55,448 nt of DNA from Octopus sinensis (taxonomy: Eukaryota): contig NW_021833686.1 in NCBI RefSeq assembly GCF_006345805.1, forward strand, positions 1 through 55,448, read 5' to 3'. This document shows, one piece after another, positions 1,864 to 37,261 of the stretch. Both the position numbers and the translations under genes were made by a program. Each line of letters begins with the position of its first letter. Within the stretch, counting starts at the first letter, position 1. Below the pieces are notes generated by a model, which worked only from the letters and a program-made list of their open reading frames with translations, searched no databases and had not been told where the DNA came from.

Positions 1864-1928
1864 CTATGGCCAAAAATGGATTTCTTTTCTGGTAAGACTG
1901 GGAAGTTGGATTCTATCAATTTTGGCAG
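1864..1928 (-). CDS. ESD: ESD-B coding exon 5, LPKLIESNFPVLPEKKSIFGH(S); later exons lie left of the window
   Basis: 65 nt with AG/GT intact. One difference from ESD-A (TCT>TTT). Confidence 0.92.
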
Positions 1929-1967
1929 CTGAAATACATCAAAATCACGGTTTGTTACACATGAATC

Positions 1968-1996
<29 letters not shown>

Positions 1997-1998
<2 letters not shown>

Positions 1999-2301
1999 TA
2001 GCAGTATCGCCCGGCGTTGCTCGGGTTTGTAAGGGAAATAACTATATAAGCATTTTAGAGAGTTACTTCCCTTATATAAACAGAGCAAAAAATGCATTAA
2101 AAAAACGAAAAAATGATGGTAAATTTTTTTTTAATCGTAGACTCATCGTAGACGCGCGCTAATACCCAGAAGGGCTCGAAATGAATCACGACTATAAGAT
2201 ACCCGATTTTGGTTAAACTGCACCGCAAAATGTGGGAGTAGTTAGGAATCTAAATTGGAGTAGACAGACACACACACAACTTCAGTTTTATATATAAAGA
2301 T
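1997..2301 (+). mobile_element. Helentron/HINE (DINE-1-like) non-autonomous element (copies 4250-4630, 30447-30749, 44885-45286)
   Basis: Starts ACTAGCAGTATCGCCCGGCGTTGCTCGGG and ends TTTATATATAAAGAT. Class assigned from terminal resemblance. Confidence 0.55.
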
Positions 2302-2368
2302 GACATGAAATAAAGGTGGTGGTGGTGGTGATGGTGGCGGTAAAATGTTGTAAAATGGTAGAATTTAC

Positions 2369-2490
2369 CTCTTTGACAATGTAAGAATACATTCGGTAGT
2401 TGGTGCTCCATTTTGGTTGAGTTGCATCCACATAGGAAGCAACATCCTTTTGAAGGTCATAGCCATCATCTTTGCGCTCATAAAATGCCC
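2369..2490 (-). CDS. ESD: ESD-B coding exon 4, [41 protein letters not shown]
   Basis: ttttacAG/GTAAAT boundaries, 122 nt, in frame. The 3' half matches ESD-A apart from the last codons; the 5' half is strongly diverged. Confidence 0.9.
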
Positions 2491-2628
2491 CTGTAAAATG
2501 TGAAGGACAACAGTAATACAAACAACTATATTCCCTTCTTTCCTGAGCATCAATAATACTTTAATTGTTCCACGTCCTGCGTTGCTGTGTTTTTTTCTCT
2601 TTTTTTCTGTGTTTTCTTGTTTGGATTA

Positions 2629-2671
<43 letters not shown>

Positions 2672-2779
2672 TGAGCTGAGACCCCCTTCGGTCATGACTG
2701 ACCATGGGATTGCACCTAGAAAGTTACCCTCCAAGGTACAAGTTCGGGTAAGGTTGTTTATGGAATACCAGCAGTCGCC

Positions 2780-3170
2780 CATCCTTTTGGAGAAGGGGTC
2801 CTATCTTGTAGTGCACTGAGACTGTTTCTTTCGCGAAATGAAAGAAGGCCTTTGGGTTTGATTTAATGTTTTTTTATAACCCAGGCTTCTTTGTCTGCTT
2901 TCTCCCTCACATAGGATTGTTGCAGCCTTTTTTCGATCTCCATCAGTGTTGTTTTTAGGCGGGACGTTTCGCTACTTTTGGGATGTTGGTTGAGACGATT
3001 TGCAACCTTCGTCCATCGTCTCATGAGGAGCTTCCTGTCTCTTGGAATCTTGCTCCTATTTGTTTTGGCCTTGTGCTCTGGGACATATTTCTGGCATACG
3101 GCCTCCCCGCTCCACGCCATCAGTGTTATCCAAGGGAAAGGCAAAGGGGCCGATACAGCTTGTTGATATA
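2780..3170 (-). mobile_element. CR1-like LINE ORF2 internal fragment (linker between APE and RT)
   Basis: Translation IPRDRKLLMRR...IEKRLQQS...IKSNPKAFFHF, with a frameshift. Confidence 0.7.
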
Positions 3171-3438
3171 TGTTTCGATGGATTAATTAAAATTAAAAAT
3201 CATTTATCATAATTAGTTACATCTGTGAAAATGGCTTATTAATGAACACTGTTATTTTTAATCTCCTCCTTGAAGAGATTCATACATTATCCCACAATAT
3301 TTTTACTCTTGTATTAATCTTAGTTTTAACGTATCCATCGAAACGTATGTCGGTGATATAAATGATTTAAATAACCTCTTATGTGTTTGTCTCCATATTC
3401 CATTCCTCTTATATATATATAATACATACATACATACA

Positions 3439-3512
<74 letters not shown>

Positions 3513-3711
3513 TCTTTTACTTGTTTCAGTCATTTGACTGCGGCCATGCTGGAACACTGCCCTTTTTTAGTCGAGCAAATCGACCCCGGGACTTATTCTT
3601 TGTAAGCCCTTATTCTATCGGTCTTTTTTGCCGAACCACTAAGTGACGGGGACGTAAACACACCAGCATCGGTTGTGAACCAATGCTAGGGGGACAAACA
3701 CAGACACACAA

Positions 3712-3760
<49 letters not shown>

Positions 3761-4857
3761 ACAGGCTTCTTTCAGTTTCCGTCTACCAAATCCACTCACA
3801 GGCATTGGCCAGCCCGGGGCTATAGCAGAAGACACTTGCCCAAGATGCCATGCAGTGGGACTGAACCCAGAACCATGTAGTTGATTAGCAAGCTACTTAC
3901 CACACAGCCACTCCTGCGCCTATATATATATCACCATCACCGTGACCAACCAGGCTATCAAATGTTGCTACACATCGCTGGTCACGTTGTTTTAGCCTTC
4001 CAATGAAGCCACTCTGCTGGCTAAGCGAGCAGGCCAACAGAAGAAAGAGTGAGAGAAAGTTGTGGTGAAAGAGTACAGCATGGATCGCCACCACCCCCTG
4101 CTGGAACCTCGTGGAGCTTTAGGAGTTTTCGCTCAATAAACACTCACAATGCCTGGTCTGGGAATCGAAACCACGATCCTATAACATGTATATATATATG
4201 TTATATATATATATATATATAATATATATATATATTATATATATATATATCGCTATATAAACGGCAGTTTGTCTGTGCGTTTTCTGTGTGTCTGTTTTCT
4301 CGTACCCTCACCCTGACCACGGCTTTCAACCGCTTCTGATGAAACTTGACACACCGCATAGCCCAATGTCATAATTCAAAACTAACGCAGCGAAAATTTT
4401 GAAAAGTTCCCCCAGTTCTGAAAAAAATCGATAAATTCGACATGGGGGTCGAGAATCAGAAACCCAAACCACAGACTGTCTAGGGACGCAACTCCACCTT
4501 TTTTAACTCTCAAAAAAATTTACCATCATTTTTTTTCCATTTTTTTGCTATTTTTTTCGCTATAACTCTCTAAAATGCTTTATAGTTATTTCCCTTACAA
4601 ACCTGAGCAACGCCGGGCGATACTGCTAGTATATATATATATGTATATAAAACAATTTAATAAATAAAACATATGCATAAATACATACATATATATACAT
4701 ACCTCCATCTATATGTATATATACATGCATTTATATATATGAGTACAGGACACCACAAATAAACGTAGAACACGAGAAGCGAAAACATAAAATCAAACAA
4801 GGAAACGGACTTTTTTAACAACGAAAAAACAGTACAAGACAAACAATACAAGGAATA

Positions 4858-4905
<48 letters not shown>

Positions 4906-4974
4906 ATTTTATTTTTTATTTTATCTAGTTTCAGCTCACGAGCTGCGGCCATGCTGGGGCAACCGCCATTTGGT

Positions 4975-5262
4975 GTTGCTACATGATTTTACTTCACGAA
5001 TGCTTTTTAGCAACTGCCATTTGGTGCATGAGAGAGTTTGATGCAGCTGCCCTCATCTGCACCTCCTGCCGTGAAGTTGGTTCATCTGGGACACCTGACA
5101 AGAAGAGATCCAGTCCTACTTTAAAGACATCCGCATCGACCCCATGCAGGTCCCTCAGGTTCTTCGGGAGGATATTGAAGAGCTGTGGGCCTCTGAAGCC
5201 CAGGCTATCACAGTATCTTGTCCTACATCTTGATGGCAAATTTAGAGTCCTTGGCACCAGAT
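4975..5262 (-). mobile_element. CR1-group LINE 3' end fragment
   Basis: SLGFRGPQLFNILPKNLR...FKVGLDLFLSGVPDEP...AAASNSL is typical of the RT C-terminal tail. Confidence 0.75.
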
Positions 5263-5342
5263 ATATATATATATGTATGTATGTATGTATTTGGTGAAGC
5301 AACAGACATGTTGTATAGAATTGGCTAAAACTGTACACTTAC

Positions 5343-5441
5343 TTGGACATGTATCAGGTGCAACAACGATGATGTTGTGTTCTGCTGCATATCTTTGGAA
5401 ACCAGATTTTGTTATGAAATTTTGCTCACTACATGTCGCAC
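5343..5441 (-). CDS. ESD: ESD-B coding exon 3, [33 protein letters not shown]
   Basis: ccaccAG/GTAAGT boundaries, 99 nt. 7 nt and 4 aa differences from ESD-A. Confidence 0.92.
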
Positions 5442-5880
5442 CTGGTGGGGGAAGAATTTAAAGAGAAAATGAATTTGAACTCAGAACATAAAGTGCCAGA
5501 ATGAAACTAAGAATTTTGTCAGGTGTGCTAATGGTTCTGACAGATTGTTTACCTTAATAACCCTTTCTACTACAGGCACAAGGCCTGAAATTATAGAAGC
5601 AGGTGGGGGAAGTTGATTAGATTAACCCCAATATACAACTGATACTTAATTTTTTGACTGGCCGTTGGCAGTCTCGTCTGGCACCTGTGCAGGTGGCACG
5701 TAAAAAGCACCCACTACACTCACGGAGTGGTTGGCGTTTGGAAGGGCATCCAGCTGTAGAAACACTGCCAGATCAGAATGGAGCCTGGTGCAGCCTCCTG
5801 GCTTCCCAGACCCCAGTCAAACCATCTAACCCATGCTAGCATGGAAAGCGGACGTTAAATGATGATGATAATGATGATGA

Positions 5881-5953
<73 letters not shown>

Positions 5954-5990
5954 GTCCAACCCATGCTAGCATGGAAAACGGACGCTAAAC

Positions 5991-6032
<42 letters not shown>

Positions 6033-6645
6033 ATATATATATATATATTTCTGTCGAAGAGCGTAGGCTTGAAACGTAAAAGACTTGTTTTATTTCTATT
6101 CCTGAGCGCCATACTAATACAATTGTTTGTTTGTATTCCACCTGCCTTCGTCTTTTGTTTATTTTCATAAAGCTTCCTGTTATATATATATATACATATA
6201 TATATGTGGTGGTTATGGCGATAAAAGTGATGATGACAGCAGTGGTGGTGGTGGTAATAACGATGTTTATAATGATGATGATTATGCTTTAGGTATTAGG
6301 AAGGGCATCCAGCTGTAGAAACACTGCCAGATCAGACTGGGCCTGGTGCAGCCATCTGGGTTCCCAGACCCCCGGTCGAACTGTCCAACCCATGCTAGCA
6401 TGGAAAGCGGACGTTAAACAATGATGATGATGATGATGATGATAATGATGAAAAGGATGAGAGACAAAGTTGACCTCGGCGGAATTTAAACTCAGAACGT
6501 AGCGACAGACAAGCTGTGGAAACTTTGCCAAATCCATGCCAGTATGGAAAGCGGACATTAAACAATGATGATGAGGATGATAATATATCATCCCAGAACC
6601 ATGTGGTTGCTATGCAAGTCACTTACCACACAGCTACACCTATGC

Positions 6646-6687
<42 letters not shown>

Positions 6688-6976
6688 CAGGCTTCTTTTA
6701 ACATTGACCGAGGCCTTGGCATTATGTCGTGCTTAAGAAGAAGCCCCATCAGGCTAAGTAAAATTGCAGTAGTGGCAGATACTGGTGTCACACAAATGGC
6801 ACCTGAGCCAGTGGCACATAAAAGCGCCCAAAACACTCTCAGAGTGGTTGACATTAGGAAGGGCATCCAGCCTTGTAGAAGCCATACCGGGCCAGTTCAG
6901 GGCCTGGTGCAGCCTTTTAGCTTGCCTACCCTCAGTCAAACCGTCTAAACCATGACAGTATGGAAAGCGGAATTAA

Positions 6977-7197
6977 CCCTTTCATTACCGTATTTATTTT
7001 GAGATGCTCTGTGTTTCCTTCAATTATTTTAAATATAACAAAGAATTTAGTAAAATAACTTATTTATCATTCAGCTAGTGTTAGGAATATAAATTGTGAC
7101 TAAGGTTTGGTGGAAGATTTTAATTCAAAACTTATGAAAACAAGACATTTGTACTACAGAACCAGAGCTGGTTTCAGCCGGGTTGGTAATGAAAGGG
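6977..7197. mobile_element. piggyBac-type MITE
   Basis: TTAA-CCCTTTCATTACC...GGTAATGAAAGGG-TTAA (13-bp TIR, TTAA TSD). Confidence 0.85.
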
Positions 7198-7393
7198 TTA
7201 AACAATGATGATGATGATGATAATATATCATCCCAGAACCATGTGGTTGCTATGCAAGTTACTTACCACACAGCCACTCCTATGGCTATACACACACACA
7301 CAAACACAACAGGCTTCTTTTAGCATTAGGCTACCAAATTCACTCAAAAGTCTTTAGTCAGCTGGAACTATAGTAGAAGACATTTGTCTAAGG

Positions 7394-7612
7394 CAGTGCT
7401 TTTCAAACTTTTTGCTAGAGTGGAACCCCAAGGAGAGATTCCACTGGCTCGAGGAACCCCTCTGCAATAATTTAATAGTCATATGCACACATATCTGCAC
7501 AGGAGAATTAAAAATTACTGCAGATTTTAGAACTTTTGTAACTTCTTGCGGAACCCCTGGACTGTACTGGCGGAACCCCAAGGTTCCGCAGAACCCTGGT
7601 TGAAGACCACTG
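7394..7612. mobile_element. hAT/Charlie-type MITE (other copies 10060-10143, 10621-10822, 22902-23102, 26378-26596)
   Basis: CAGTG(C/G)TT...AA(G/C)CACTG termini. Near-matching 8-bp TSDs GTCTAAGG/GCCTAAGG here and GTCTTGGT/GTCTAGGT at 22902. Confidence 0.8.
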
Positions 7613-7795
7613 GCCTAAGGTACCATGCATCGGAACTGATCCCAGGACCTTGTAGTGGGGAAGTAAATTTCTTCCTGCAGGGCCACAATTTAATGATGAT
7701 GATGAGGTTGTTGTATCAGAAAGGGTCTGTTGTTCTCCCCTGCCATCTAACCAAGTACCAGTAATTGAATCAGGGACTAAGGGAATTAAACTCAC

Positions 7796-7884
7796 CGGAA
7801 AGCCAATAGAGCACAGGAAGTTTGCCAAATTCAGATTTCGCAGGTAAATAAATACCGAATTTCATTTCACATTTCAATTCAGAA
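7796..7884 (-). CDS. ESD: ESD-B coding exon 2
   Basis: Identical to 26133-26221 with intact AG/GT. Visible at the end of ORF 7770..8444. Confidence 0.93.
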
Positions 7885-7904
7885 CTGAAAAGAGAATTTG
7901 ATTG

Positions 7905-8405
7905 ATAGATGGACAGACGGACAAATGAATAGATAGATGAATAGACAGATAGACAGACAGACAGGCAGACAGACACACAGACATGAATAGATAGATAGAC
8001 AGTCAGATAGATAGAAAGATAGCTAGCTAGATAGATAGGTAGACAGACAGACAAATGGATGGATGGATGGATGGACAGACAGATGGACGGACAGACAGAT
8101 AGATAAAAAAATAGATAGATAGATGGATGGATGGATAGACAGATAGATAGATAGACAGACAGACAGACATGAATAGATAGACAGTTAGATAGAAAGAGAG
8201 ATAGATAGACAGACAGACAGACAGATAGATAGACAGACAGATAGAAAGACAGACAGATAGAAAGACAGACAGACAGAAAGACAGATAGAAAGAAAGACAG
8301 ATCGATATAAAGACAGATAGATATAGACACACAGATAGACAGAGATAGACAGATAGATAAACAGATGGATAGACAGATAGACAGGTAGATGGATAGATTG
8401 ATGGA
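7905..8405. repeat. (GATA)/(GACA) compound microsatellite, mirrored at 25815-26110; others (GATA) 44385-44520, (CCTT) 51200-51345, (TTTCC) 55360-55440
   Basis: Directly visible. Confidence 0.95.
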
Positions 8406-8911
8406 GAGGAGAGAAACAGGTGTGTCTCCTTTTCTTGACTCCATGCGCTAGTCCTAAAATGGGTGCCCCTGTCATACAAGCAGTGTCCTTCACTCCCAAT
8501 ATACTGCAGAAACATGTCTGACCATGGGGAAATATTACCTTGTTTGGAAACAAGTGAGAGTTGGCGACAGGAAGGGCACCCCAGTCGCAGAAAATCTGCC
8601 TCCAATAAACCGCAAGGTGGACACTGAATGATAATGATGAATAAAGAATGAACCTGACTTTTATTAAAGTACTTCGCATAGATGTTTGTTACTGCTGGGG
8701 ATAATGGTGAACCAATTGCTATGCCTGCGAAGTGCTGATAAATTACGTTTCAATCTGGAAACAAAGAATTCTTCGGCTCGGTCTTAATATCTTGTTGAGT
8801 TTTTCAAATGGTATTTAGTGTGTACATGATTATTATCGTTGAAATAGGTAAGAAGAAAAACAGGTAAAAGAGAGAAGCAGGAAAAACAAAAGAAGGAAGG
8901 GTGTTGTTTAC

Positions 8912-8982
8912 CTGGAATGTTTGAAGACTTTCTGGAAGCCTCCAAAACATTTGTTCGATGATACCTGTTCAAGATTACTCAT
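8912..8982 (-). CDS. ESD: ESD-B (inverted paralog) coding exon 1
   Basis: Reverse complement is identical to 25235-25305. Acceptor at 9005-9006, donor intact. Confidence 0.93.
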
Positions 8983-10144
8983 TATTACTTTCAAACTAAG
9001 AAACCTGACAAAAGTAGAAAAGAAACAACAGAATGCATGAATATTCAAGGAATAATGAGAGCAGCCGAGTCATTTAACTATATATATACATACAGCATAT
9101 TGTGTGTGTATATCTGTACGCATACATACATATACATAAATACATACACACATACACACACACACACACATATATACATTCATGCATGCATACATACATA
9201 AATACATACATACATACATATGTATGTATATATACGTCCCCGTAACTTAGCGGTTCGGCAAAAGAGACCAATAGAATAAGTACTGGGCTTACAAAGAATA
9301 AGTCCCGGAGTCGATTTGCTCGACTAAAGGCGGTGCTCCAGCATGGCCGCAGTCAAATGACTGAAACAAGTAAAAGGGTAAAGAGTAAGAGTCTATTGAG
9401 GTAAAAAAACATTCTGTGCCGTATGAAAATGTCCCTCGTTTAAGAAACAGATTAGGTTTATTTACATTTGTGAAGAAAAAAGGATACCCTTCCCCCCACC
9501 CCTAACCCTAACCCTAACCCTAAAAGAGATTGAAATGCAATAGATCGATACTAGGGTCATAATTATGGGTGACAATTTCATATGACACCGCTAGAAAAAC
9601 TGCCGGTCAAACCGAAAAGATCCCTAACCCTAACCAACCCTAACCCTAAAACAGATTGAAATGCAATAGATCGATACTAGGGTCATAATTATGGGTGACA
9701 ATTTCATATGACACTGCTAGAAAAAACTGCCGTTCAAACGGAAAAGATCCCAGCTCGGAGCTAGAAAAACAAATCTTCTTTTGAATAGCGTTAAAGGGTT
9801 AAAGAAACCACGACCACCACCACTATACAGCGGGGAGGGTTGCTGATGTTAATCCTTAAGCATTCAGATTACTCAGTCAAATGCAATACTCATATAAATT
9901 ACATTGCTTTGAATTCATCATGCATTATTTTGGAGCTTAGATCTTTTGATGAGGTTACTGTTAATTTTCGTAATGATATGGTAGGGTTGGTATTTAATCA
10001 ACCATGCTAACAGGTTGATGGTGTTACCACAGCCCGTTTTCCCAGTGAGTAAACATCTAGAGCAGAGGTTTTCAACCAGGGTTCTGCGAGCCAGTGGAAT
10101 GTTTCCATGGGGTTCCGCTCCCGCAAAAAGGTTGAAAAGCACTA

Positions 10145-10212
<68 letters not shown>

Positions 10213-10214
10213 AT

Positions 10215-10580
10215 AAATATTAGGGAATAAATCCAAATTTACATGGAAAATCAGATTTAGGATTGAATCCAATTTTATAGTAAAATATTATATAATATTA
10301 ATAGAGACAAAACCACTATTTTGCAAATCAAACAAAGAAGACTTAATCCAATACATAAAAAAATTTTAATATAAATTAAATAAAATTATATTCGCCACTA
10401 CAATTGTTTCATGTCTCTTCTCAGGACATTCATCAGGTGGATTTCAGATGAATGTCCTGAGAAGAGACATGAAACAATTGTAGTGGCGAATATAATTTTA
10501 TTTAATTTATATTAAACTTTTTTATGTATTGGATTAAGTCTTTCTTTGTTTGATTTGCAAAATAGTGGTTTTGTCTCTAA

Positions 10581-10590: not shown

Positions 10591-10623
<33 letters not shown>

Positions 10624-28046: not shown

Positions 28047-28122
<76 letters not shown>

Positions 28123-28411: not shown

Positions 28412-28466
28412 AAAAAGAGCTTATCTCAACAACAAGACATTATAACAATTTTGATAGGCTCTCTTT

Positions 28467-28549
28467 CTTTCCTGATGAGAAGATTGCATTGTACACCGTT
28501 TATTCCTTTGGAATAAAACCAATGTTGTCTTCGAAACATATGTCGAAAG
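28467..28549 (+). ncRNA. Type-I hammerhead ribozyme with extended stem II
   Basis: CUUUC-CUGAUGA-GAAGAUUGCAUUG...CAAUGUUGUCUUC-GAAAC-AUAU-GUC-GAAAG. Confidence 0.8.
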
Positions 28550-28689
28550 TAAAAGAATTTGAATAACACCTGCGTTCAACTCCATTTATTTACTTATAAT
28601 ACACAAATTACTGCACATTAACCCGGAGTTTCTACCTTTGAAAAGGTCGCTACATCCTTGTTACTTGCGTGAATTTTGCTAACCTGGTA

Positions 28690-29580
28690 ACTGTTTATTG
28701 ATGATGTCAAACTGGTCGCTCCTCGCGGTGATATAGAGGATCTTCGTCGATGCCTCCACCAAATTTGGAGATGGTCTAACGAATGAGACCTGTGTCTGAA
28801 CGTGTCAAAGTGCTGTCATCTGCCTGTTGGCTCTCCTCCTGCAACTCAACTTGATTTTGAGCTGGGTCGTCTGCTGCTGGAGAGGACCGATCAGGTAAAG
28901 GACCTGGGTATCTTGGTGGATTCCTCCTTTTTGCCTTCGGCCCAGTGCGTCCATGCTGCCAACAAAGCACGTGGAATTCTGTTCTTGATTCGACGGTCAT
29001 TCGGAATGCTCACAGCAGCCATATTCCTACCGCTCTATGTCACACTGGTGAGACCCATATTGGAGTACAGGATTCAAGCCTCTTCTCCTTATCTCCTCAA
29101 AGACATACAGCATCTCGAAAGAGTCCAGAAGCTGGCTACCCGCATGGTTCTTGGTCTCAAGAATTTGTCTTCTGAAGAAAGGCTGAAGACGCTCGACCTT
29201 TATTCTCTAGAAAAACGCCGACGCTGTGGTGACCTCATTCTTGCCTACAACACCATAAGTGGAAAGTGTAACCTCTCGAAAGAGCTGTTCTTCACTCCTG
29301 CTCCAGAGCGTCGGCTGCGGGGTCATTCCGAAAAGCTCTATCTACGACGATTTCATCTCAATCAAAGAAGAGCTTTCTCCGTCCGGGTTGTGGATCCGTG
29401 GAATAAGCTGCCGGACGAGATAGTGAAGATGCCGACGACCGCTTTGTTCAAAGTCTCTCTTGACCATAAATGGCCTGAACTCTTTGCATGAACACCCTCC
29501 CTGTACATAACTCCATGTCCCCCTACATGGCCTTGCTTTTTGCTTTTTGAGCCAAAAAATTAACTAACTAACTAACTAAC
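28690..29580 (+). mobile_element. 5'-truncated CR1 LINE (RT C-terminus and 3' UTR, (TAAC)n tail)
   Basis: FIDDVKL, KDLGILVD, LVRPILEY and WNKLP motifs (ORF 28802..29491). Confidence 0.9.
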
Positions 29581-29631
29581 TATTGAATTTTCCATGTTAA
29601 CAGTAAACAAAGGATATTTCATTCATCCATT

Positions 29632-29673
<42 letters not shown>

Positions 29674-30254
29674 TGTATGTATTTATATATAAGAGGAATG
29701 GAAGATGGAGACAAACACACTGACAAATGAAGTGAGTTCATGGCTCGCAGGATGCCCTGCTGTGGTAACCTTGGATCGTAGAGTGACCTGCTGTGCTTGA
29801 AGAGACGTATTGAGTCAAGTATGTCAACATCAAAATAAAAGTCAAATGGAAATTGTAGTTGTGAGCCCTGTGCCGGTGGCATGTAAAAAGCACCATTAGA
29901 ACGTGGCAGATGCCAGCGCCACTTGATTGACATTCGTGTCGGCGACACGTAAAAAGCACCAGTCGATCGTGGCTGTTTGGCAGCCTCCTTTGGCCCCTGT
30001 GGCGGTGGCACGTAAAAAGCACGCTCTACACTCACGGAGTGGTTGGCGTTAGGAAGGGCATCCAGCTGTAGAAACACTGTCAGATCAGGCAGGAGCCTGG
30101 TGCAGCCTCCTGGCTTCCCAGATCCCGGTCGAACCGTCCAACCCATGCTAGCATGGAAAATGGACGTTAAACGATGATGATGTATATATATACATATATA
30201 CATATATATATATATATAGTTGTTTGTATTATTGTTGTCCTTCATGTTTTACAG

Positions 30255-30378
30255 GGGGCTGTAACATTGAGGGTGAAGATGATAGCTATGACTTTGGTTC
30301 CGGTGCTGGTTTCTATGTGGATGCAACTCAACCAAAATGGAGCACCAACTACCGAATGTATTCTTACATTGTAAAGAA
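30255..30378 (+). CDS. ESD: ESD-A coding exon 4, [40 protein letters not shown](KE); 1 nt short at 3' end
   Basis: ttttacAG acceptor; [13 protein letters not shown] and NYRMYSY motifs. It is 124 nt to GTAAGT, but 125 nt is needed for frame. Confidence 0.92.
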
Positions 30379-30819
30379 GTAAGTTCTACCATTTTACAAA
30401 CATTTACCGCCACCATCACCACCACCACCACCTTTATTTCATGTCACCTTTATATATAAAACTGAAGTTGTGTGTGTGTCTGTCTACTCCGATTTAGATT
30501 CCTAACTACTACCACATTTTGCGGTGCAGTTTAACCAAAAGCGGGTATCCTATAGTCGTGATTCATATCGAGCCCTTCTGGGTATTAGCGCGCGTCTACG
30601 ATGAGTCTACAATTTATAAAAATATTTACCATCATTTTTTCGTTTTTTTTAATGCATTTTTTGCTCTGTTTATATAAGGGAAGTAACTCTCTAAAATGCT
30701 TATAGTTATTTCCCTTACAAACCGAGCAACGCCGGGCGATACTGCTAGTTATTATTATTATTCTATTATTATTATTATTAGATTCATGCGTAACAAACCA
30801 TGATTTTGATGTATTTCAG

Positions 30820-30884
30820 CTGCCAAAATTGATAGAATCCAACTTCCCAGTCTTACCAGAAAAGAAATCCATTTCTGGCCATAG
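30820..30884 (+). CDS. ESD: ESD-A coding exon 5, LPKLIESNFPVLPEKKSISGH(S); catalytic Ser codon split AG|C
   Basis: atttcAG/GTGAGT boundaries, 65 nt. First half of the GHSMGG nucleophile elbow. Confidence 0.95.
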
Positions 30885-32461
30885 GTGAGTCAGAAATTTC
30901 TTTTCTTTGACCCTTTGCCAATCCTTGTCCCTTCATGCCCCTTAAAAAAAACAAAGCCTTTAAAAAATTTCACTGATTTTAGATTAAACTTTTATGGTAA
31001 GCTTTCACGGTCTGGAACAGAAGGACCCTATGCGACTGTTCGCTACGGGTGTCAACCCCCTACTGAACATGCCGTATGCTCAGTCCGATTCTTCCTGGCA
31101 AGATCATGTCCAAACAAGTAGGGGCAGGTTTGCGTTGCGAAAATGCAACCAAGGAAATATTTTAAGAATCTTATTTCTTTATTACCCAAAAGGGGCTAAT
31201 CATAGAGGGAAGAAACAAGGGCAGACAAACGGATTAAATCGATTACATCGATCCCCAGTGCGTCACTGGTACTTAATTTATCGACCCCGAAAGGATGAAA
31301 GGCAAAGTCGACCTCGGCAGAATTTGAACTCAGAACGTAACGGCAGACAAAATACCTATTTCTTTACTACCCAAAAGGGGCTAAACATAGAGGGAACAAA
31401 TTAAGTACCAGTGACGCACTAGGGTCGATATAATCAACTTAATCCGTCTGTCTGTCCTTTTGTCCTCTCTGTGGGCCTTGTGGGCAGTAAAGAAAAAGGT
31501 ATTTTGTCTGCCGTTAAATTTTGAGTTCAAATTCCGCCGAGGTCGACTTTGCCTTTCATCCTTTCAGGATCGATAAATTAAGTACCAGTTACGGACTGGG
31601 GTCGATATAATCGACTTAATCCCTTTGTCTGTCCTTGTTTGTACTTTGTGTGTTTAGCCCCTTGTGGGCAGAAAAAAAAACGTATTTTGTCTGCCGTTAA
31701 ATTTTTGAGTTCAAATTCTGCCGAGGTCGACTTTGCCTTTCATCCTTTCGGAGTCGATAAATAAAGTACCAGTTAATCAACTTAATCCATTTGTCTGTCC
31801 CTGATTGTCCCCTCCGTGTCTAGCCCCTTGTGGGCAGTAAAGAAACAACAAACATATATACAATGGGCTTCGTTTAGTTTCTGTCTCCCAAATCCACTCA
31901 AGGGTTTGATCTCCCTGAGGCTATAGTAGAAGACATTCACCCAATCTGCCAGGTAATGGGACTGAACCTGGAACCATGGGGTTGGGAAGCAAACTTCTTA
32001 CCACTCAACCACACCTGTACCTGTAATTACCTTCTTAATGGCGGTGAGCTGGCAGAAACGTTAGCGCGCCGGGCGAAATGCGTAGCTGTATTTTGTCTAC
32101 CGTTACGTTCTGAGTTCAAATTCCGCCGAGGTCGACTTTGCCTTTCATCCTTTCGGGGTCGATTAAATGAGTACCAGTTACGCACTGGGGGTCGATGTAA
32201 TCGACTTAATACCTATGTCTGTCCTTGTTTGTCCCCTCTATGTTTAGCCCCTTGTGGGTAGTAAAGAAATAGGTATCTTTCAGCTTCTCTGTGTTCCTTA
32301 CTCTCATGGATTTGGTTGGCCCAGGGCTGTTTTAGAAGTCAGTAGGATTGAACCTGGCCCCACATGTTTGGAACCATGGGGACTGGGAAGCAAACTTCTT
32401 ACCACTCAACCACACCTGTACCTGTAATTACCTTCTAATTATCCCCTTCTTTATGTTGCAG

Positions 32462-32614
32462 CATGGGCGGACATGGTGCCTTGGTGATAGCCTTAAAGAA
32501 TCCAACAGGGTACAAGTCTGTGAGTGCCTTTGCCCCAATCTGTAACCCAGTTAAATGTAACTGGGGTAAAAGGCCTTTACAGGGTATTTGGGTGAAAAGG
32601 AAGATGATTGGCAT
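32462..32614 (+). CDS. ESD: ESD-A coding exon 6, [36 protein letters not shown](K)[14 protein letters not shown]; 1-nt deletion in an A-run near 32568
   Basis: ttgcAG/GTAAGT boundaries. Motifs MGGHGAL and [21 protein letters not shown] is restored by adding one A. Confidence 0.92.
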
Positions 32615-32904
32615 GTAAGTATTAATAAATTTTATCAGCATCAGCAGCATATGTTTTTATGTGCTACTATTAGTTTCATGTGCTGAGAGCATGCCAAACA
32701 GCATTTTTGAACAAGTCTGGTGGTCCTATAGCACAATGCCTGATGGTTTTGCTAGGACACCAGACATGTTAAAAATATGCCTAGCATGTTCTCAGCATAT
32801 AAAATTAATAGTAGCACATAAAAACATATATTGTTTTTATCAAATGATATTTATCTCTCACCAGACGGAGTACATTTTTGTGTTGATCTGACCATGTGTG
32901 ATTC

Positions 32905-33445
32905 TTACTGAGCTGCAAACGATGATGTCACCGATTGTTGCTGAACTGCAAATGATGATGTCATTGATTGTTGCTGAACTGCAAATGATGATGTCACCGA
33001 TTGTTGCTGAACTGCAAATGATGATGTCACTGATTGTTGCTGAACTGCAAATGATGATGTCACTGATTGTTGCTGAACTACAAATGATGATGTCATTGAT
33101 TGTTGCTGAGCTGCAAACGATGATGTCACCGATTGTTGCTGAATGCAAATGATGATGTCATTGAATTGTTGCTGAGCTGCAAATGATGATGTCACTGATT
33201 GTTGCTGAACTGCAAATGATGATGTCATTGATTGTTGCTGAGCTGCAAACGATGATCACCGATTGTTGCTGAACTGCAAATGATGATGTCATTGATTGTT
33301 GCTGAGCTGCAAATGATGATGTCACTGATTGTTGCTGAACTGCAAATGATGATATCACCGATTGTTGCTGAACTGCAAATGATGATGTCATTGATTCTTG
33401 CTGAGCTGCAAACGATGACGTCACTGATTGTTGCTGAACTGCAAA
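32905..33445. repeat. 33-bp minisatellite, about 16 copies, in ESD-A intron
   Basis: Unit TGATGATGTCA(C/T)TGATTGTTGCTGAACTGCAAA. Confidence 0.95.
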
Positions 33446-33618
33446 TTGTGATCTCACATTCTTTAGAACATTGACACACACACACACACAATCCACAGAG
33501 GTGTACATAACTTGAGGAGAGCAACATGTCAGTAAACAACCAGGTTTAATCATGAAATATTTGAAGAACTGATAGTTTTAAAGTCTGTTTCTTAAATGTG
33601 TTTTTTTCATTTACCTAG

Positions 33619-33684
33619 GAATATGATACCTGTAGTTTGATCAAGAAGAACGGAAGTCCATTTGCTGACATCCTCATTGACCAG
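33619..33684 (+). CDS. ESD: ESD-A coding exon 7, EYDTCSLIKKNGSPFADILIDQ
   Basis: cctAG/GTAACT boundaries, 66 nt, phase 0-0. YD and ILIDQ family motifs. Confidence 0.9.
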
Positions 33685-34867
33685 GTAACTGTAGTTAATC
33701 ACTTTCTGACCCACTTTGCAAAACAGGTATTCTAATAAGACGCACAGACACACCCAGGCACATTGTCTCTTTTGCCGAACCGCTAAGTTACGGTGACGTA
33801 ACATACCAGCATCGGTTGTCAAATGATATTGGTGGGACAAACACGGACACACAAACACATACCTATATATACATATATACGACGGGCTTCTTTCAGTTTC
33901 CGCTGAGGTCAACTTTGCCTTTCATCTTTTCAGGGTCGATAAAATAAGTACCAGTTTCGTACTGAGGTCAATCTAATTGGCTGGCCCCCTCCCCCAATTA
34001 CATCGTCATCATCATCGTTTAATGTCCGTTTTCCATGCTAGCATGGGTTGGATGTTTTGACCAGGGTCTGGGAAGCCAGGAGGCTGCATCAAGCTCCAGT
34101 CTGATCTGGCAGTGTTTCTACAGCTGGATGCCCTTCCAAATGCCAACCACTCCGTGAGTGTAGTGGGTGCTTTTTAAGTGCCACCGGCATAGGTATCATA
34201 ACTACAATTTCCATTTGATTTTTATTTTGATGTTGGTGTTGATGTCCTTGACTCAATAGGTCTCCTCAAGCACAGTGGGGTCACTCTACGATCCAAGGTT
34301 AGCACAGCAGGCCGTCCTGCGTGCCATGAACTCACTTCATTTGTCGGGTTTGATTGAATTATGTGACTGCTAAAAGGTTGGTTTAGTATTGTAGAGTTGA
34401 GGCTATCATTAGGTGAGACAAGCTGACTGACAGGTGACGGTCGTTTAAAAAAAGCGCGGGCTAAAACTACGCGCCTTCACTAGTCAGTTAAGGTGAGACA
34501 GTGTCACGTGACAACTTGCTGGAGCCTATGCGGCAGGTATTTAAATGGAAAAATTTGACAAGACAGTCAGTCACCGGCTGACACTCGCTGACGATACATC
34601 GAAGAGGCCAGGGAACAGAAGAAAGAAGACATGCACCCAACACCAGAGCTGAAGACACCTCCAAAAGGGGAGCCCCGCCACGTCATAACGGTAGAGGAGT
34701 AGGGGCCAAAACCGGACGTGGTTCCTCCTGATGATGTCTTGAGCTAACTGGATCCTATAAAGGAGCTGTTGTGGTAGCAGACCACGAAACACGGTTGTAA
34801 TTCCTCCATTTTAGGATTGAAACCAGATTAGGTCTGGATTAATTGGGATTTTAATTTTGTATTTTAG

Positions 34868-34966
34868 GGTTTGGCTGATGACTTTCTAAAGGAGCAGTTA
34901 TTAACAGAGAATTTGGAGAAGGCTACTGCGGAGAAAAATGTTGTAGCCACAGTCCGGAAACAAGAG
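34868..34966 (+). CDS. ESD: ESD-A coding exon 8, GLADDFLKEQLLTENLEKATAEKNVVATVRKQE (catalytic Asp region)
   Basis: ttttAG/GTAAGA boundaries, 99 nt. G..D.FL..QL motif. Confidence 0.92.
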
Positions 34967-35083
34967 GTAAGAACTTGGAATATCATCATCTTTTGCCGAA
35001 CCGCTAAGTTACGGGGACATAAACACACCAGCATCGGTTATCAAGCGATGTTGGGGGGGACAAACACAGACACACAAACATAT

Positions 35084-35142
<59 letters not shown>

Positions 35143-35909
35143 TGATGGGCTTCTTTAAGTTTCCGTTCACCAAATCCACTCACAAGGCTTTGGTTGGCCC
35201 GAAGTTATTGTAGAAGACACTTGCCCAAGGTGCCACGCAGTGGGACCGAACCCGGAATCATGTGGTTGGTAAGCAAGCTACTTACCACACACCCACTCCT
35301 AGTGTGTACTTTCCATACATAACAGAAGGTGTGATTTGATGGAGATTTGGTTGCTATTTCTGGCAGGACAAGTTGCTACGTAGAGGCTCTCTCGCTTTTA
35401 CTAGGAGTCCTTCAAAAGGGTTCTACTTGTTTTGGGAGTAAAAGACTTAATCACTCACTGCTTTACACCACCACCACTGCCATTCTGATTCTTCTTGAGG
35501 GAATACATAAAGAATACATGTATGTCTGTGGAATACTCTACCACTTACCAGTTCAGTTACTCAAACAACTGAATCCTTATCATCCAAATCACTGAAGATC
35601 CATCATCATCACCATCGTCATCTTAATTGTCATCATCGTTAATTAACATCTGTTTTTACATGCTGGCATGGGTCGGATGGATTGACAGGATCCAGTGAGT
35701 CTCCAGGGATGCCTTATGCTCCAATGGTTTCTTTGCTTGGATACGGCCCTTCCAACTAATACCAGCTATTACAGTATGTACTTAGTGCTGTTCTCGTGCT
35801 ACAGGCACTAGTGAAGTTGCTGAGTAACTTGCTCAAGAGATAGAAGATCTAAGACTAAGTGTGTGTGTGTGTGTGTTTGTGCAGTATTTAAAAAATTTCA
35901 AAAAATTTT

Positions 35910-36985
35910 ACGTGCTGGTCCCCTTACATTTTTTTCGATGATTTGCCGTCCCCTGTAAAATGCAGGATTATCAATGGAATTTTACATGCTAGTCCCCTTA
36001 CAGTTTTTTTCGATGATTTGCCGTCCCCTGTAAAATGCAGGATTATCAACATGGAAATTTTACATGCTAGTCCCTTACAGTTTTTTTCGATGATTTGCCG
36101 TCCCCTGTAAAATGCAGGATTATCAACATGGAAATTTTAATGCTAGTCCCCTTACAGTTTTTTCGATGATTTGCCGTCCCCTGTAAAATGCAGGATATCA
36201 ACATGGAAATTTTACATGCTAAGTCCCCTTACAGTTTTTTCGATGATTTGCCGTCCCCTGTAAAATGCAAGATTATCAACATGGAAATTTTACATGCTAG
36301 TCCCCTTACAGTTTTTTTCGATGATTTGCCGTCCCCTGTAAAATGCAGGATTATCAACATGGAAATTTTACATGCTGGTCCCCTACATTTTTTTTCATGA
36401 TTTGCCGTCCCCTGTAAAATGCAGGATTATCAACATGGAAATTTTACATGCTAGTCCCCTTACAGTTTTTTTCGATGATTTGCCGTCCCCTGTAAAATGC
36501 AGGATTATCAACATGGAAATTTTACATGCTGGTCCCCCTTACAGTTTTTTTCGATGATTTGCCGTCCCCTGTAAAATGCAGGATTATCAACATGGAAATT
36601 TTACATGCTAGTCCCCTTACAGTTTTTTTCGATGATTTGTGCCGTCCCCTGTAAAATGCAGGATTATCAACATGGAAATTTTACATGCTAGTCCCCTTAC
36701 AGTTTTTTTCGATGATTTGCCGTCCCCTGTAAAACAAGATTATCAACATGGAAATTTTACATGCTGGTCCCCTTACAGTTTTTTTCGATGATTGCCGTCC
36801 CCTGTAAAATGCAGGATTATCAACATGGAAATTTTACATGCTAGTCCCCTTACAGTTTTTTTCGATGATTTGCCGTCCCCTGTAAAATGCAGGATTATCA
36901 ACATGGAAATTTTACATGCTGGTCCCCCTTACAGTTTTTTTCGATGATTTGCCGTCCCCTGTAAAATGCAGGATTATCAGCATGG
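35910..36985. repeat. About 78-bp minisatellite, about 14 copies, in the last ESD-A intron
   Basis: Unit TGCTAGTCCCCTTACAGTTTTTTTCGATGATTTGCCGTCCCCTGTAAAATGCAGGATTATCAACATGGAAATTTTACA. Confidence 0.95.
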
Positions 36986-37183
36986 AAAAAAATTACATAC
37001 ACTCGTGTACCGTAATTTCTGGACTATGAACCACAGTGCCCATAGATCTACAACCCCCGAAAACCATAAGTTAATCCAGGAAATGCCCTATTGGGATACA
37101 ATAAATGCACTTCAAAATATGGGGAATCGGTTGGTTATAAGACAACAATGTTCCTGCCTCAAATGTCCATCTTCTATTTTCAG

Positions 37184-37261
37184 GGCTACGACCACAGTTA
37201 CTACTTCATCGCATCTTTTATTGGTGACCACATTAAGCATCACGCTAAATATCTGAATTAA
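37184..37261 (+). CDS. ESD: ESD-A last coding exon, [25 protein letters not shown] (catalytic His)
   Basis: ttttcAG acceptor, GYDHSYYFI motif, TAA at 37259-61. Confidence 0.96.

What the first reader, a model, noticed from the sequence alone, without database searches (positions are those of the whole stretch)
1864..37261. Head-to-head inverted duplication of the S-formylglutathione hydrolase (ESD) gene
Blocks of 30-16380 are the reverse complement of blocks of 20230-31935: exons, flanking introns, shared MITE/SINE insertions and the putative promoter. The two copies are transcribed divergently across a spacer of about 3.8 kb. All five visible ESD-B coding exons keep AG/GT sites and frame. 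ESD is, to my knowledge, usually single-copy in animals, so a maintained second copy is unusual. The arms have different private TE insertions and differ in exons 3-4, which argues against a simple assembly fold-back.
Basis: partly seen in the sequence, partly recalled or inferred. Interest (0 to 1): 0.8.

Follow-up and report, generated by a model that had tools for sequence, protein, structure and literature searches.

The report
Octopus esterase D gene, inverted duplicate
Octopus sinensis, like its sister species O. vulgaris, really carries two copies of the housekeeping esterase D (S-formylglutathione hydrolase) gene placed head to head; one copy is the normal enzyme, and the other is intact but fast-changing, with key substrate-pocket residues rewritten, which makes this a tidy but not extraordinary case of a young gene duplicate.

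Summary
Window 32-16394 is the collinear reverse complement of 31936-20206, with 87-97% identity per block. The window is a whole unplaced Octopus sinensis scaffold, about 98% identical to chromosome CM016886.1. The same head-to-head arrangement is present on that chromosome and in the independent O. vulgaris assembly. It is already annotated as neighbouring genes (XP_036370426/XP_036370427; CAI9741746/CAI9741747).

The duplicated unit is a whole gene: about 175 bp of promoter, a leader exon, nine coding exons and about 305 bp past the stop codon. ESD-B exons 6-9 lie left of the window and are intact.

- **ESD-A** is the canonical enzyme (omega 0.07 between the two species). Its two frameshifts in this window are private 1-nt deletions, at the general indel density of this long-read assembly, so they are most likely errors.
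- **ESD-B** keeps an open reading frame and the Ser/Asp/His triad, and passes the curated S-formylglutathione hydrolase (SFGH) model. It carries 37 lineage-specific replacements against 3 in ESD-A. These sit in exon islands that are more diverged than the flanking introns. They include the pocket Leu and the gatekeeper Trp.

The most likely reading is a lineage-specific paralog with an altered pocket. Early decay is the main rival. No expression or activity data were available. Interest is modest.

The parts
1..16394 (-). Arm B of the inverted duplication. It holds the 5' part of ESD-B and continues beyond the left edge of the window.
   Evidence: Collinear inverted HSPs 32-16394 vs 31936-20206. 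L001 extends it to exon 9.
1864..8982 (-). ESD-B coding exons 1-5: 8982-8912, 7884-7796, 5441-5343, 2490-2369, 1928-1864. Together they equal XP_036355510.1, the 148-aa partial model.
   Evidence: P0167 is identical to the translation and sits on a contig of 55448 bp.
2429..2490 (-). The rewritten 5' part of ESD-B exon 4. It has 20 fixed substitutions and a 3-nt deletion relative to ESD-A, and encodes RAFYERKDDGYDLQKDVASY in place of [21 protein letters not shown].
   Evidence: Flanking noncoding DNA in the same block has only 4 fixed differences in 649 sites.
16190..16243 (-). ESD-B homolog of the leader exon. The GT donor is kept and there is no upstream ATG. A CCAAT-like CTCATTGG lies just upstream, at about 16310.
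16395..20205 (.). Non-duplicated central spacer between the two promoters. It consists largely of a 147-bp array (16939-17815) and a 184-bp array (18975-19891).
20206..37567 (+). Arm A, the complete duplicated unit: about 175 bp of promoter, the leader exon, nine coding exons and about 305 bp of 3' flank with an AATAAA at 37421.
20383..20441 (+). ESD-A leader exon. In the NCBI and ENA gene models it is an in-frame upstream start. A CCAAT-like CTCATTGG lies at 20315.
25235..37261 (+). ESD-A coding exons 1-9: 25235-25305, 26133-26221, 27888-27986, 30255-30378, 30820-30884, 32462-32614, 33619-33684, 34868-34966, 37184-37261. This is the canonical S-formylglutathione hydrolase.
30372..30373 (+). 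A private 1-nt deletion in ESD-A exon 4 of this scaffold. The C is present in all six other copies.
   Evidence: The background density of 1-nt gaps is given.
32568..32571 (+). A private 1-nt deficit in an A-run of ESD-A exon 6. The run reads AAAA here and AAAAA on the chromosome.

Best explanation
This is a genuine inverted (head-to-head) duplication of the whole esterase D / S-formylglutathione hydrolase gene, fixed in evolution. It arose in the lineage leading to Octopus sinensis and O. vulgaris, before those two species split and probably after O. bimaculoides diverged.

**Shown.**
- The duplicated unit runs from about 175 bp upstream of a leader exon to about 305 bp past the stop codon. 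Each copy therefore has its own core promoter and poly(A) signal.
- The two copies are transcribed divergently across a 3.8-kb spacer rich in satellite repeats.
- ESD-A is the canonical enzyme under strong purifying selection.
- ESD-B keeps a full reading frame, all splice sites, the GHSMGG nucleophile motif and the Asp/His of the triad.
- ESD-B has taken almost all of the amino-acid change since the duplication. The change lies in exon islands (exon 3, the 5' half of exon 4, exons 6 and 8) that are more diverged than the surrounding introns.
- These islands replace the pocket/oxyanion Leu (to Ala or Val), the gatekeeper Trp (to Leu), the DFGxGAGFY loop and residues next to the catalytic Asp.
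- The two frameshifts of ESD-A in this window are at the indel-noise level of an unplaced haplotig in a long-read assembly.

**Inferred.**
- ESD-B is a still-functional serine esterase whose substrate pocket has been widened or reshaped by directional selection (neofunctionalisation).
- Past gene conversion between the inverted arms homogenised the introns, and selection kept the B-specific exon islands.
For: **The duplication is real.** The inverted collinear blocks are. The same arrangement is present in the O. sinensis chromosome and in O. vulgaris. Neighbouring accessions are annotated in both species. In noncoding DNA, 175 sites show the orthology-type pattern against 5 concerted-type sites.

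**The unit is a whole gene.**

**ESD-A is constrained.** dN 0.003 and dS 0.042 between the two species give omega 0.07. None of the 72 positions that are at least 98% conserved is changed. ESD-A scores 427 bits on TIGR02821.

**ESD-B is intact.** It is a nine-exon reading frame in both species once private indels are set aside. It scores 353-360 bits on TIGR02821 against a cutoff of 281.7. The catalytic Ser, Asp and His are aligned as invariant. The AF2 model has pLDDT 88.6, with confidence low only at residues 88-101.

**ESD-B has changed fast and unevenly.**
- The relative-rate test gives 3 A-specific against 37 B-specific replacements, p=8e-8.
- Fixed exon divergence is 8.8%, against 3.9% in noncoding DNA, p=4.5e-8.
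- In the exon 4-5 block, the exon patch has 20 fixed substitutions while noncoding DNA has 4 in 649 sites.
- Only 10 of 231 same-amino-acid codons differ, against 49 replaced codons. Exons 4 and 8 together have 33 replacement nucleotide changes and no synonymous ones, p=5e-4.

**Neutral decay is unlikely.** The probability of no stop codon is 0.046, and of no frameshift about 3e-4 to 4e-3.

**Pocket residues.** Leu55 and Trp182 are described as pocket and gatekeeper residues, and the W182A mutant accepts longer acyl chains (PMC6699074).

**The ESD-A frameshifts are probably errors.** Every coding indel is private to one assembled copy. Between this scaffold and the chromosome there are 3.2-4.7 one-nucleotide gaps per kb, 58-68% of them in homopolymers. 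That predicts about 4 such gaps in an 846-nt coding sequence. The O. vulgaris assembly is based on ONT R9.4.1 reads (PMC10700109).
Against: - No transcript, proteomic or enzymatic evidence for ESD-B was obtainable. The protein collection holds no transcript-derived B-type sequence. The one ESD peptide listed in the O. vulgaris ink proteome is A-type.
- Since the species split, ESD-B has omega of about 0.9 (7 replacement and 2 synonymous changes). That fits relaxed constraint as well as adaptation.
- When replaced codons are counted as single events, the excess of replacements over the whole coding sequence is not significant (p=0.31). It is borderline for exons 3, 4, 6 and 8 (p=0.053).
- One third of the replaced codons have multi-nucleotide changes, which can mimic positive selection.
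- The conserved exons 1, 5 and 7 lie in blocks where the introns are also nearly identical. Their conservation may therefore reflect past gene conversion rather than constraint on ESD-B.
- ESD-B has lost 11 positions that are at least 98% conserved in 160 homologs, as a decaying enzyme would.
- O. sinensis ESD-B additionally has D259G and S261G beside the catalytic His.
- The chromosomal ESD-B copy has a 2-nt insertion in exon 4.
Confidence: 0.6

Rival explanations
1. ESD-B is a redundant copy in early decay. It would be a nonfunctional or catalytically crippled pseudo-enzyme whose reading frame has survived by chance and through past gene conversion from ESD-A. Its exon islands would come from a few neutral multi-nucleotide mutation events.
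For: - Omega is about 0.9, both for ESD-A against ESD-B and between the two ESD-B orthologs.
- ESD-B has lost 11 of 72 near-universal residues, including the DFGxGAGFY block and the gatekeeper Trp.
- O. sinensis ESD-B has D259G and S261G next to the catalytic His.
- 16 of the 49 replaced codons are multi-hit.
- Tests that count codons as single events are not significant, or only borderline.
- No expression evidence was found.
Against: - A neutral copy should diverge in exons as in introns. Instead exons show 8.8% against 3.9% (p=4.5e-8), and the exon-4 patch is more than 30-fold above its flanking introns.
- Mutation clusters occur in four separate exons and in none of 4.4 kb of aligned introns.
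- There is no stop codon (P=0.046) and no shared frameshift (P<0.005) despite 79 substitutions.
- Every splice site is kept, as are the promoter element and the leader-exon donor.
- Gene-conversion rescue is unlikely recently: 5 concerted-type sites against 175 orthology-type sites.
Confidence: 0.27
2. The inverted repeat is an assembly artefact: a fold-back or chimeric long read, or two haplotypes joined head to head. On this view the species has a single ESD gene.
For: The window is an unplaced scaffold of a long-read assembly with many small indel errors. The O. vulgaris locus does contain one probable false duplication at a scaffold gap.
Against: - The same arrangement is seen in three assembled versions from two species and two sequencing technologies.
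- The arms differ by 3.9% fixed substitutions shared across species, by large private insertions, and by about 49 amino-acid replacements.
- The arms are separated by 3.8 kb of unique spacer.
- Haplotypes differ by only about 1-2% here.
Confidence: 0.02
3. The B-specific exon islands were copied in from a third, older ESD-like sequence. The route would be ectopic or cDNA-templated short-patch conversion, which would explain why exons are changed and introns are not.
For: The divergence is confined to exons and has sharp edges. Within the islands both synonymous and replacement positions are changed.
Against:
- No third ESD-like protein of O. sinensis or O. vulgaris turned up in three protein searches.
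- Codons that keep the same amino acid are only about 4% different even inside the diverged exons. This argues against wholesale import of an old sequence.
Confidence: 0.04
4. The two frameshifts in ESD-A of this scaffold are real, so this haplotype carries a null allele of the canonical gene.
For: Both deletions are present in the deposited sequence. NCBI produced no protein model for ESD-A on this scaffold, only the partial ESD-B model.
Against: - The density of 1-nt gaps between scaffold and chromosome is the same in noncoding DNA, and most are in homopolymers.
- Five of the seven assembled copies have their own private coding indels.
- Apart from these indels, the scaffold's coding sequence differs from the chromosomal allele only by point changes (Ser/Phe in exon 5, two third-position changes in exon 3) and by the chromosome's own garbled stretch in exon 8, with no sign of decay.
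Confidence: 0.07

Closest known systems
Esterase D / S-formylglutathione hydrolase (human ESD, PDB 3FCX; TIGR02821 fghA_ester_D; Pfam PF00756)
   Same: Both copies align end to end with human ESD. ESD-B gives E=4e-103 against 3FCX. Both exceed the curated equivalog cutoff and keep GHSMGG, the catalytic Asp and the catalytic His.
   Different: ESD-B replaces 11 of the 72 positions that are at least 98% conserved in 160 homologs. These include the Leu55 equivalent, the gatekeeper Trp and the DFGxGAGFY loop. ESD-B also ends 5 residues later, because its stop codon mutated. ESD-A has none of these changes.
Engineered W182A mutant of Shewanella frigidimarina SFGH, and the W197I mutant of yeast SFGH
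   Same: The same gatekeeper tryptophan is replaced by a small aliphatic residue. In SfSFGH this change shifts the preference to longer acyl chains (PMC6699074). ESD-B has Leu at this position.
   Different: Those are single laboratory mutations with measured kinetics. ESD-B is a natural paralog with about 49 replacements and no biochemical data.
Paralog pairs of SFGH in other organisms (E. coli FrmB and YeiG; from my own knowledge)
   Same: Two SFGH-family genes in one genome, with partly different substrate preferences.
   Different: The bacterial pair is old, unlinked and not an inverted repeat. The octopus pair is young, at roughly 8-10 My by a crude local clock. It is adjacent and head to head.
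Young inverted segmental duplications that undergo gene conversion, with selected 'islands' of paralog-specific sequence (general class, from my own knowledge)
   Same: The arms are inverted. Intron divergence is heterogeneous: about 1.3% in the 5' half against about 5.5% in the 3' half. Paralog-specific exon patches are sharply bounded.
   Different: Conversion here is inferred only from the heterogeneity of divergence. Since the species split there is almost no trace of it (5 concerted-type sites).

Membership tests
S-formylglutathione hydrolase / esterase D (TIGR02821, PF00756) | Whole-protein score above the curated equivalog cutoff (281.7 bits) | tested here: met
   ESD-A scores 427.1 bits. 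ESD-B scores 352.6 bits (O. sinensis) and 360.0 bits (O. vulgaris).
S-formylglutathione hydrolase / esterase D (TIGR02821, PF00756) | GHSMGG motif with the nucleophile Ser, plus the catalytic Asp and His | tested here: met
   All three are invariant in the alignments, including both copies. In ESD-B of O. sinensis the residues on either side of the His are changed (D259G, S261G).
S-formylglutathione hydrolase / esterase D (TIGR02821, PF00756) | Conserved substrate-pocket residues: oxyanion/pocket Leu55, Cys57, Asn61, His147, gatekeeper Trp182 and Phe226 (SfSFGH numbering, PMC6699074) | tested here: not met
   ESD-A has all of them. ESD-B keeps Cys, Asn, His and Phe, but has Leu changed to Ala (O. 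sinensis) or Val (O. vulgaris), and Trp changed to Leu. The feature is not met for ESD-B only.
S-formylglutathione hydrolase / esterase D (TIGR02821, PF00756) | Conserved block DFGxGAGFY | tested here: not met
   ESD-A has DFGSGAGFY and ESD-B has DLQKDVASY. The AF2 confidence is below 50 at residues 88-101, the N-terminal part of the rewritten segment. The feature is not met for ESD-B only.
S-formylglutathione hydrolase / esterase D (TIGR02821, PF00756) | Hydrolysis of S-formylglutathione | not testable with these tools
   This needs recombinant protein and an enzyme assay.
Genuine inverted segmental (whole-gene) duplication | Two collinear reverse-complement arms that each contain a complete transcription unit | tested here: met
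Genuine inverted segmental (whole-gene) duplication | Present in independent assemblies or species, with paralog-specific fixed differences | tested here: met
   Found in the O. sinensis chromosome, the O. sinensis scaffold and the O. vulgaris chromosome. There are 175 fixed noncoding differences and 68 fixed exonic differences.
Genuine inverted segmental (whole-gene) duplication | Support from read depth and from reads that span the junctions | not testable with these tools
Expressed, functional paralog | Paralog-specific transcripts or peptides | tested here: inconclusive
   There are no transcript-derived B-type proteins in the collection. The ink-proteome peptide is A-type. The gene models exist, but they are predictions.

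The most novel reading that the evidence does not exclude
ESD-B is a lineage-specific, newly specialised serine esterase of the Octopus vulgaris species complex. About 8-10 My ago an inverted duplication freed one copy of a universally conserved formaldehyde-detoxification enzyme. Directional selection then rewrote three active-site loops: the pocket Leu, the gatekeeper Trp, and the segment after the catalytic Asp. The result would be an enzyme that accepts larger or different (thio)esters. Gene conversion between the inverted arms would have erased intron divergence, and selection would have preserved the B-specific exon islands.
Probability: 0.4. Interest if true: 0.45.

Novelty: new member of a known kind. 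Interest (0 to 1): 0.3.

Why it matters
Esterase D / S-formylglutathione hydrolase is among the most conserved metabolic enzymes from bacteria to humans, and it is usually a single gene in animals.

This young paralog keeps the catalytic triad but has naturally replaced the residues that laboratory mutagenesis identifies as determinants of substrate size. It is a compact natural experiment in how a housekeeping hydrolase acquires a new specificity, and it is easy to test by expressing both copies.

The locus also gives a clean small example of exon 'islands' of divergence inside an inverted repeat.

There is a practical point as well. The locus shows three annotation hazards in current octopus assemblies:
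- a redundant haplotig scaffold;
- indel-induced pseudo-frameshifts, which produced 'LOW QUALITY' or truncated gene models;
- a fused two-copy gene model at a scaffold gap in O. vulgaris.

None of this overturns current understanding. Lineage-specific gene duplicates are common.

Tried and rejected
- **Fold-back or read-error origin.** Rejected. The differences are dominated by substitutions and are shared across species.
- **Pseudogenisation of the canonical copy.** I first suspected this because ESD-A is frameshifted twice in the window. I rejected it after aligning seven assembled copies: every indel is private to one copy, and the indel density equals the noncoding background.
- **A third ESD copy in O. 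vulgaris (A1/A2).** Probably a false haplotypic duplication, because homology of the second copy starts exactly at the end of a 100-N gap. This is not fully excluded.
- **A nearby donor for the exon-4 patch or exon 6 of ESD-B.** None was found in the window or in L001-L005.
- **O. bimaculoides genomic locus, to date the duplication.** Not on record. Dating therefore rests on a crude local clock and a few informative residues.
- **Transcript-derived or other-species B-type proteins.** Two searches found none.
- **Rfam and tRNA scans, to classify the 147-bp and 184-bp repeats as tRNA-derived SINEs.** No hits.
- **NG86 dS inside the diverged exons.** This was inflated by multi-hit codons. I replaced it with counts of same-amino-acid codons.
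- **Structural role of the rewritten exon-4 loop.** The role of this loop remains undetermined.

Full report
**What the window is.** The window has about 40% GC, with introns, satellites and fragments of transposable elements. A conceptual ESD-A protein finds Octopus bimaculoides S-formylglutathione hydrolase at 94% identity, Argonauta hians at 80%, and an O. sinensis 'LOW QUALITY PROTEIN: S-formylglutathione hydrolase-like' at 82%. The cluster look-up shows a partial O. sinensis model (XP_036355510.1, 148 aa) on a contig of exactly 55,448 bp. Its sequence equals the window's ESD-B exons 1-5. The window is therefore a complete unplaced scaffold of assembly GCA_006345805.1. It is collinear with chromosome CM016886.1 at about 10.13-10.20 Mb, with block identities of 96-99.98%. 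Window 1-19213 matches L001 and window 10144-45429 matches L002. The scaffold is most likely an unpurged alternate haplotype. The published heterozygosity of the sister species is 1.22% (PMC10700109).

**Check of the observation.** A self-comparison gives inverted collinear blocks from 32-469/31936-31499 to 15904-16394/20728-20206. Block identities are 87-97% and all E-values are 0. The non-homologous centre is 16395-20205 (3.8 kb) and consists largely of 147-bp and 184-bp tandem arrays. tBLASTn and splice-site inspection place nine ESD-A exons on the + strand (25235-37261) and five ESD-B exons on the - strand (8982-1864). All have AG/GT sites. Differences between the arms are mainly substitutions, with transitions about equal to transversions, plus large private insertions.

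**Extent of the duplication.**
- L001 carries ESD-B exons 6-9, with canonical splice sites.
- Homology between ESD-A in the window and ESD-B in L001 runs across the whole gene and ends about 305 bp after the stop codon. That is window about 37567 and L001 about 33698. It lies beyond an AATAAA at 37421.
- At the inner end, homology starts about 175 bp upstream of the annotated ESD-A leader exon (20383-20441).
- The inner homology includes a CCAAT-like CTCATTGG and the GT donor of the leader exon in both arms. The ESD-B leader homolog is at 16243-16190.

The unit is therefore a complete transcription unit with a minimal promoter, duplicated in inverted orientation.

**It is not an artefact.** On the O. 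sinensis chromosome the order is UPF0240(-), ESD-B(-), spacer, ESD-A(+), SLC23-type permease(-). In O. vulgaris (GCA_951406725.2, sequenced with ONT) ESD-B is again head to head with an A-type copy, followed by the permease gene. The ATG-to-ATG distance is 16.25 kb in the window, 16.0 kb on the O. sinensis chromosome and 16.6 kb in O. vulgaris. In 4,460 aligned noncoding sites, 175 separate all A copies from all B copies in both species. Only 5 sites show the concerted pattern and 5 the crossed pattern. The duplication therefore predates the O. sinensis / O. vulgaris split, dated to about 2.5 Mya in PMC10700109. There has been little gene conversion since. Argonauta hians has one ESD gene in a 26-kb locus, next to the same UPF0240 neighbour.

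**The frameshifts.** In the window, ESD-A exon 4 is 124 nt long instead of 125, and exon 6 is 153 nt instead of 154. The literal translation therefore terminates early. Aligning seven assembled copies exon by exon shows that every frame-breaking indel is private to one copy:
- A_window: exons 4 and 6.
- A_chromosome: exon 8.
- A_vulgaris-1: exon 9.
- A_vulgaris-2: the G-run at the exon 4 acceptor.
- B_chromosome: a 2-nt insertion in exon 4. This is why NCBI flags XP_036370427 as low quality.

Between scaffold and chromosome there are 3.2-4.7 one-nucleotide gaps per kb, and 58-68% of them are in homopolymers. There are only 5.6-8.1 mismatches per kb. That predicts about four such gaps in an 846-nt coding sequence, which is what is seen. 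These indels are most likely long-read consensus errors. At the consensus level, both ESD-A and ESD-B are intact in both species.

**How the two copies have evolved.**
- ESD-A orthologs differ by 7 synonymous and 2 replacement changes, giving omega 0.07.
- ESD-B orthologs differ by 2 synonymous and 7 replacement changes, giving omega 0.89.
- With O. bimaculoides or Argonauta as outgroup, 3 replacements are A-specific and 36-37 are B-specific, p about 1e-7.
- Of the 72 positions that are at least 98% conserved in 160 homologs, ESD-A has changed none and ESD-B has changed 11.
- At the 95% conservation level, the ESD-B changes are L55A, S85C, G93R, E94K, G101Q, G103D, A104V, G105A, F106S, I176V, W184L, G185S, K187E, Y192H, Q233V and P236T.
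- The changes are clustered. Exons 1 and 2 are identical, and exon 5 differs only by a Ser/Phe polymorphism.
- Exon 3, the first 62 nt of exon 4, exon 6 and exon 8 are heavily changed.

**Exons against introns.** Fixed A|B divergence is 8.8% in exons and 3.9% in aligned noncoding DNA, p=4.5e-8. The contrast is extreme around exon 4: 20 fixed substitutions and a 3-nt deletion in about 62 nt, against 4 fixed differences in 649 flanking noncoding sites. Noncoding divergence is itself uneven, at about 1.3% from the promoter to intron 5 and about 5.5% further 3'. This points to older gene conversion or a stepwise history.

Among 231 codons that encode the same residue, only 10 differ, which is intron-like. 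By contrast, 49 codons are replaced through 69 nucleotide changes, and 16 of them are multi-hit.

| Comparison | Replacement : synonymous | p |
|---|---|---|
| Exons 4+8, nucleotide changes | 33 : 0 | 5e-4 |
| Exons 3, 4, 6, 8, nucleotide changes | 63 : 5 | 0.003 |
| Exons 4+8, codons as single events | 22 : 0 | 0.006 |
| Exons 3, 4, 6, 8, codons as single events | 43 : 5 | 0.053 |
| Whole coding sequence, codons as single events | 49 : 10 | 0.31 |

Random placement of 79 substitutions leaves the frame free of stop codons in 4.6% of simulations. At the intron ratio of indels to substitutions, the chance of no frameshift is about 3e-4 to 4e-3.

**What ESD-B probably is.**
- It passes the curated SFGH equivalog model with 353-360 bits, against a cutoff of 281.7 and 427 bits for ESD-A.
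- It aligns over its full length with human ESD (3FCX, E=4e-103).
- It retains GHSMGG and the catalytic Asp and His.
- It is predicted to keep the fold (pLDDT 88.6, pTM 0.89). Confidence is below 50 only at residues 88-101, within the rewritten exon-4 loop.
- The structural paper on Shewanella SFGH names Leu55, Cys57, Asn61, His147, Trp182 and Phe226 as pocket residues. Trp182 is the gatekeeper, and the W182A mutant accepts longer acyl chains. Yeast W197I behaves similarly (PMC6699074).
- ESD-B changes exactly two of these: the Leu (to Ala in O. sinensis, to Val in O. vulgaris) and the Trp (to Leu).
- It also changes residues immediately after the catalytic Asp (D228I, E232D, Q233V).

My preferred reading (probability about 0.6) is a functional esterase with a remodelled, probably more open pocket, produced by directional selection after the duplication. 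The main rival (about 0.27) is a redundant copy in early decay whose exon clusters are neutral multi-nucleotide events. The post-speciation omega of about 0.9, the loss of near-universal residues and the absence of any expression evidence all keep that rival alive.

**Age.** I used the locus's own noncoding divergence between the two species (about 1.75%) and the published 2.5 My split. On that scale, A-B noncoding divergence (5.7-7.3%) and pure synonymous divergence (about 7%) give roughly 8-10 My. That is well after the 34-My split from O. bimaculoides cited in PMC10700109. This clock is crude, and past gene conversion would make the estimate too young. A few informative residues mostly group A with B to the exclusion of O. 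bimaculoides, and one residue does the opposite. The O. bimaculoides locus could not be retrieved.

**What is known already.** Both genes are already annotated as adjacent loci in NCBI and ENA. No paper in the searchable library discusses an ESD duplication in octopus. The single ESD peptide tabulated among candidate bioactive peptides in the O. vulgaris ink proteome is A-type. Scientifically this is a new member of a familiar kind, a lineage-specific tandem-inverted gene duplicate with asymmetric evolution. It has a clear, testable biochemical hypothesis. I score interest at 0.3.

Noticed in passing
window 1-55448 (vs L001/L002 = CM016886.1:10125149-10195363): The window is an entire unplaced O. 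sinensis scaffold. It is collinear with a chromosomal region and about 98% identical to it (blocks 96-99.98%). One-nucleotide gaps occur at 3.2-4.7 per kb, mostly in homopolymers. It is probably an unpurged haplotig with long-read indel noise.
   Followed up: partly
L003 15605-26928, gap 31432-31531, 32445-46390: The O. vulgaris assembly holds two complete A-type ESD copies in tandem. Homology of the second copy begins exactly at the end of a 100-N scaffold gap. The ENA gene model CAI9741746.1 (582 aa) fuses both copies. This looks like a false haplotypic duplication rather than a third gene.
   Followed up: partly
window 20383-20441 (and B homolog 16243-16190, - strand): The ESD-A leader exon carries an in-frame upstream ATG. 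In the public gene models this adds 27 residues (MFLTQLSFLSQFKSFSFGRRFLSLKVI). The ESD-B homolog has lost this ATG. Several other molluscs also have ESD isoforms extended at the N terminus. Whether this is a targeting peptide was not examined.
   Followed up: no
window 49094-52648, - strand: Exons of an SLC23 / xanthine-uracil permease family transporter (PF00860) lie to the right of ESD-A. The same neighbour is present on the O. sinensis chromosome and in O. vulgaris.
   Followed up: partly
window 11255-12599, 18975-19891, 21869-22521, 31398-31775, 48646-49014; 16939-17815, 38721-39029, 49398-49673: A 184-bp repeat family forms tandem arrays at five places, including collinear positions in both arms. 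A 147-bp family forms an array in the spacer, and possibly related arrays lie at 38721-39029 and 49398-49673. Neither family gives a tRNA or Rfam hit.
   Followed up: partly
window 32899-33457, 35903-36988, 1094-1665: There are large minisatellites inside ESD introns: 33 bp x 17 in ESD-A intron 6, and 78 bp x 14 in ESD-A intron 8. A 570-bp (CAC)n tract sits in ESD-B intron 5, and its length differs between scaffold and chromosome.
   Followed up: no
window 54936-55355 (+) and 41268-41540 (-): There are two transposon-like ORF fragments. One is a GIY-YIG nuclease-domain ORF just below the Pfam cutoff. The other is a weak HTH_Tnp_4 (transposase helix-turn-helix) match.
   Followed up: partly
L001 33390-33404; L004 about 26240-26260: In ESD-B the ancestral stop codon TAA has become GAA in both species. 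This extends the protein by five residues (EASKY).
   Followed up: yes
L001 33312-33404 and 26351-26416 vs L004 26166-26243 and 20604-20669: O. sinensis ESD-B has D259G and S261G on either side of the catalytic His, and I209M/K210R in exon 7. O. vulgaris ESD-B has the A-type sequence at these sites. This is either very recent change in O. sinensis or small A-to-B conversion tracts in O. vulgaris.
   Followed up: partly
L005 783-4785 and 10001-16335; L001 41029-43404: The UPF0240 (PF06784) neighbour lies upstream of the single ESD gene, on the same strand, in Argonauta. In Octopus it lies downstream of ESD-B. A local rearrangement therefore accompanied or followed the duplication.
   Followed up: no
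window 20206-31100 vs 31500-37567: Fixed A|B noncoding divergence is about 1.3% in the 5' two-thirds of the unit and about 5.5% in the 3' third. This suggests an old large conversion event or a two-step origin.
   Followed up: partly
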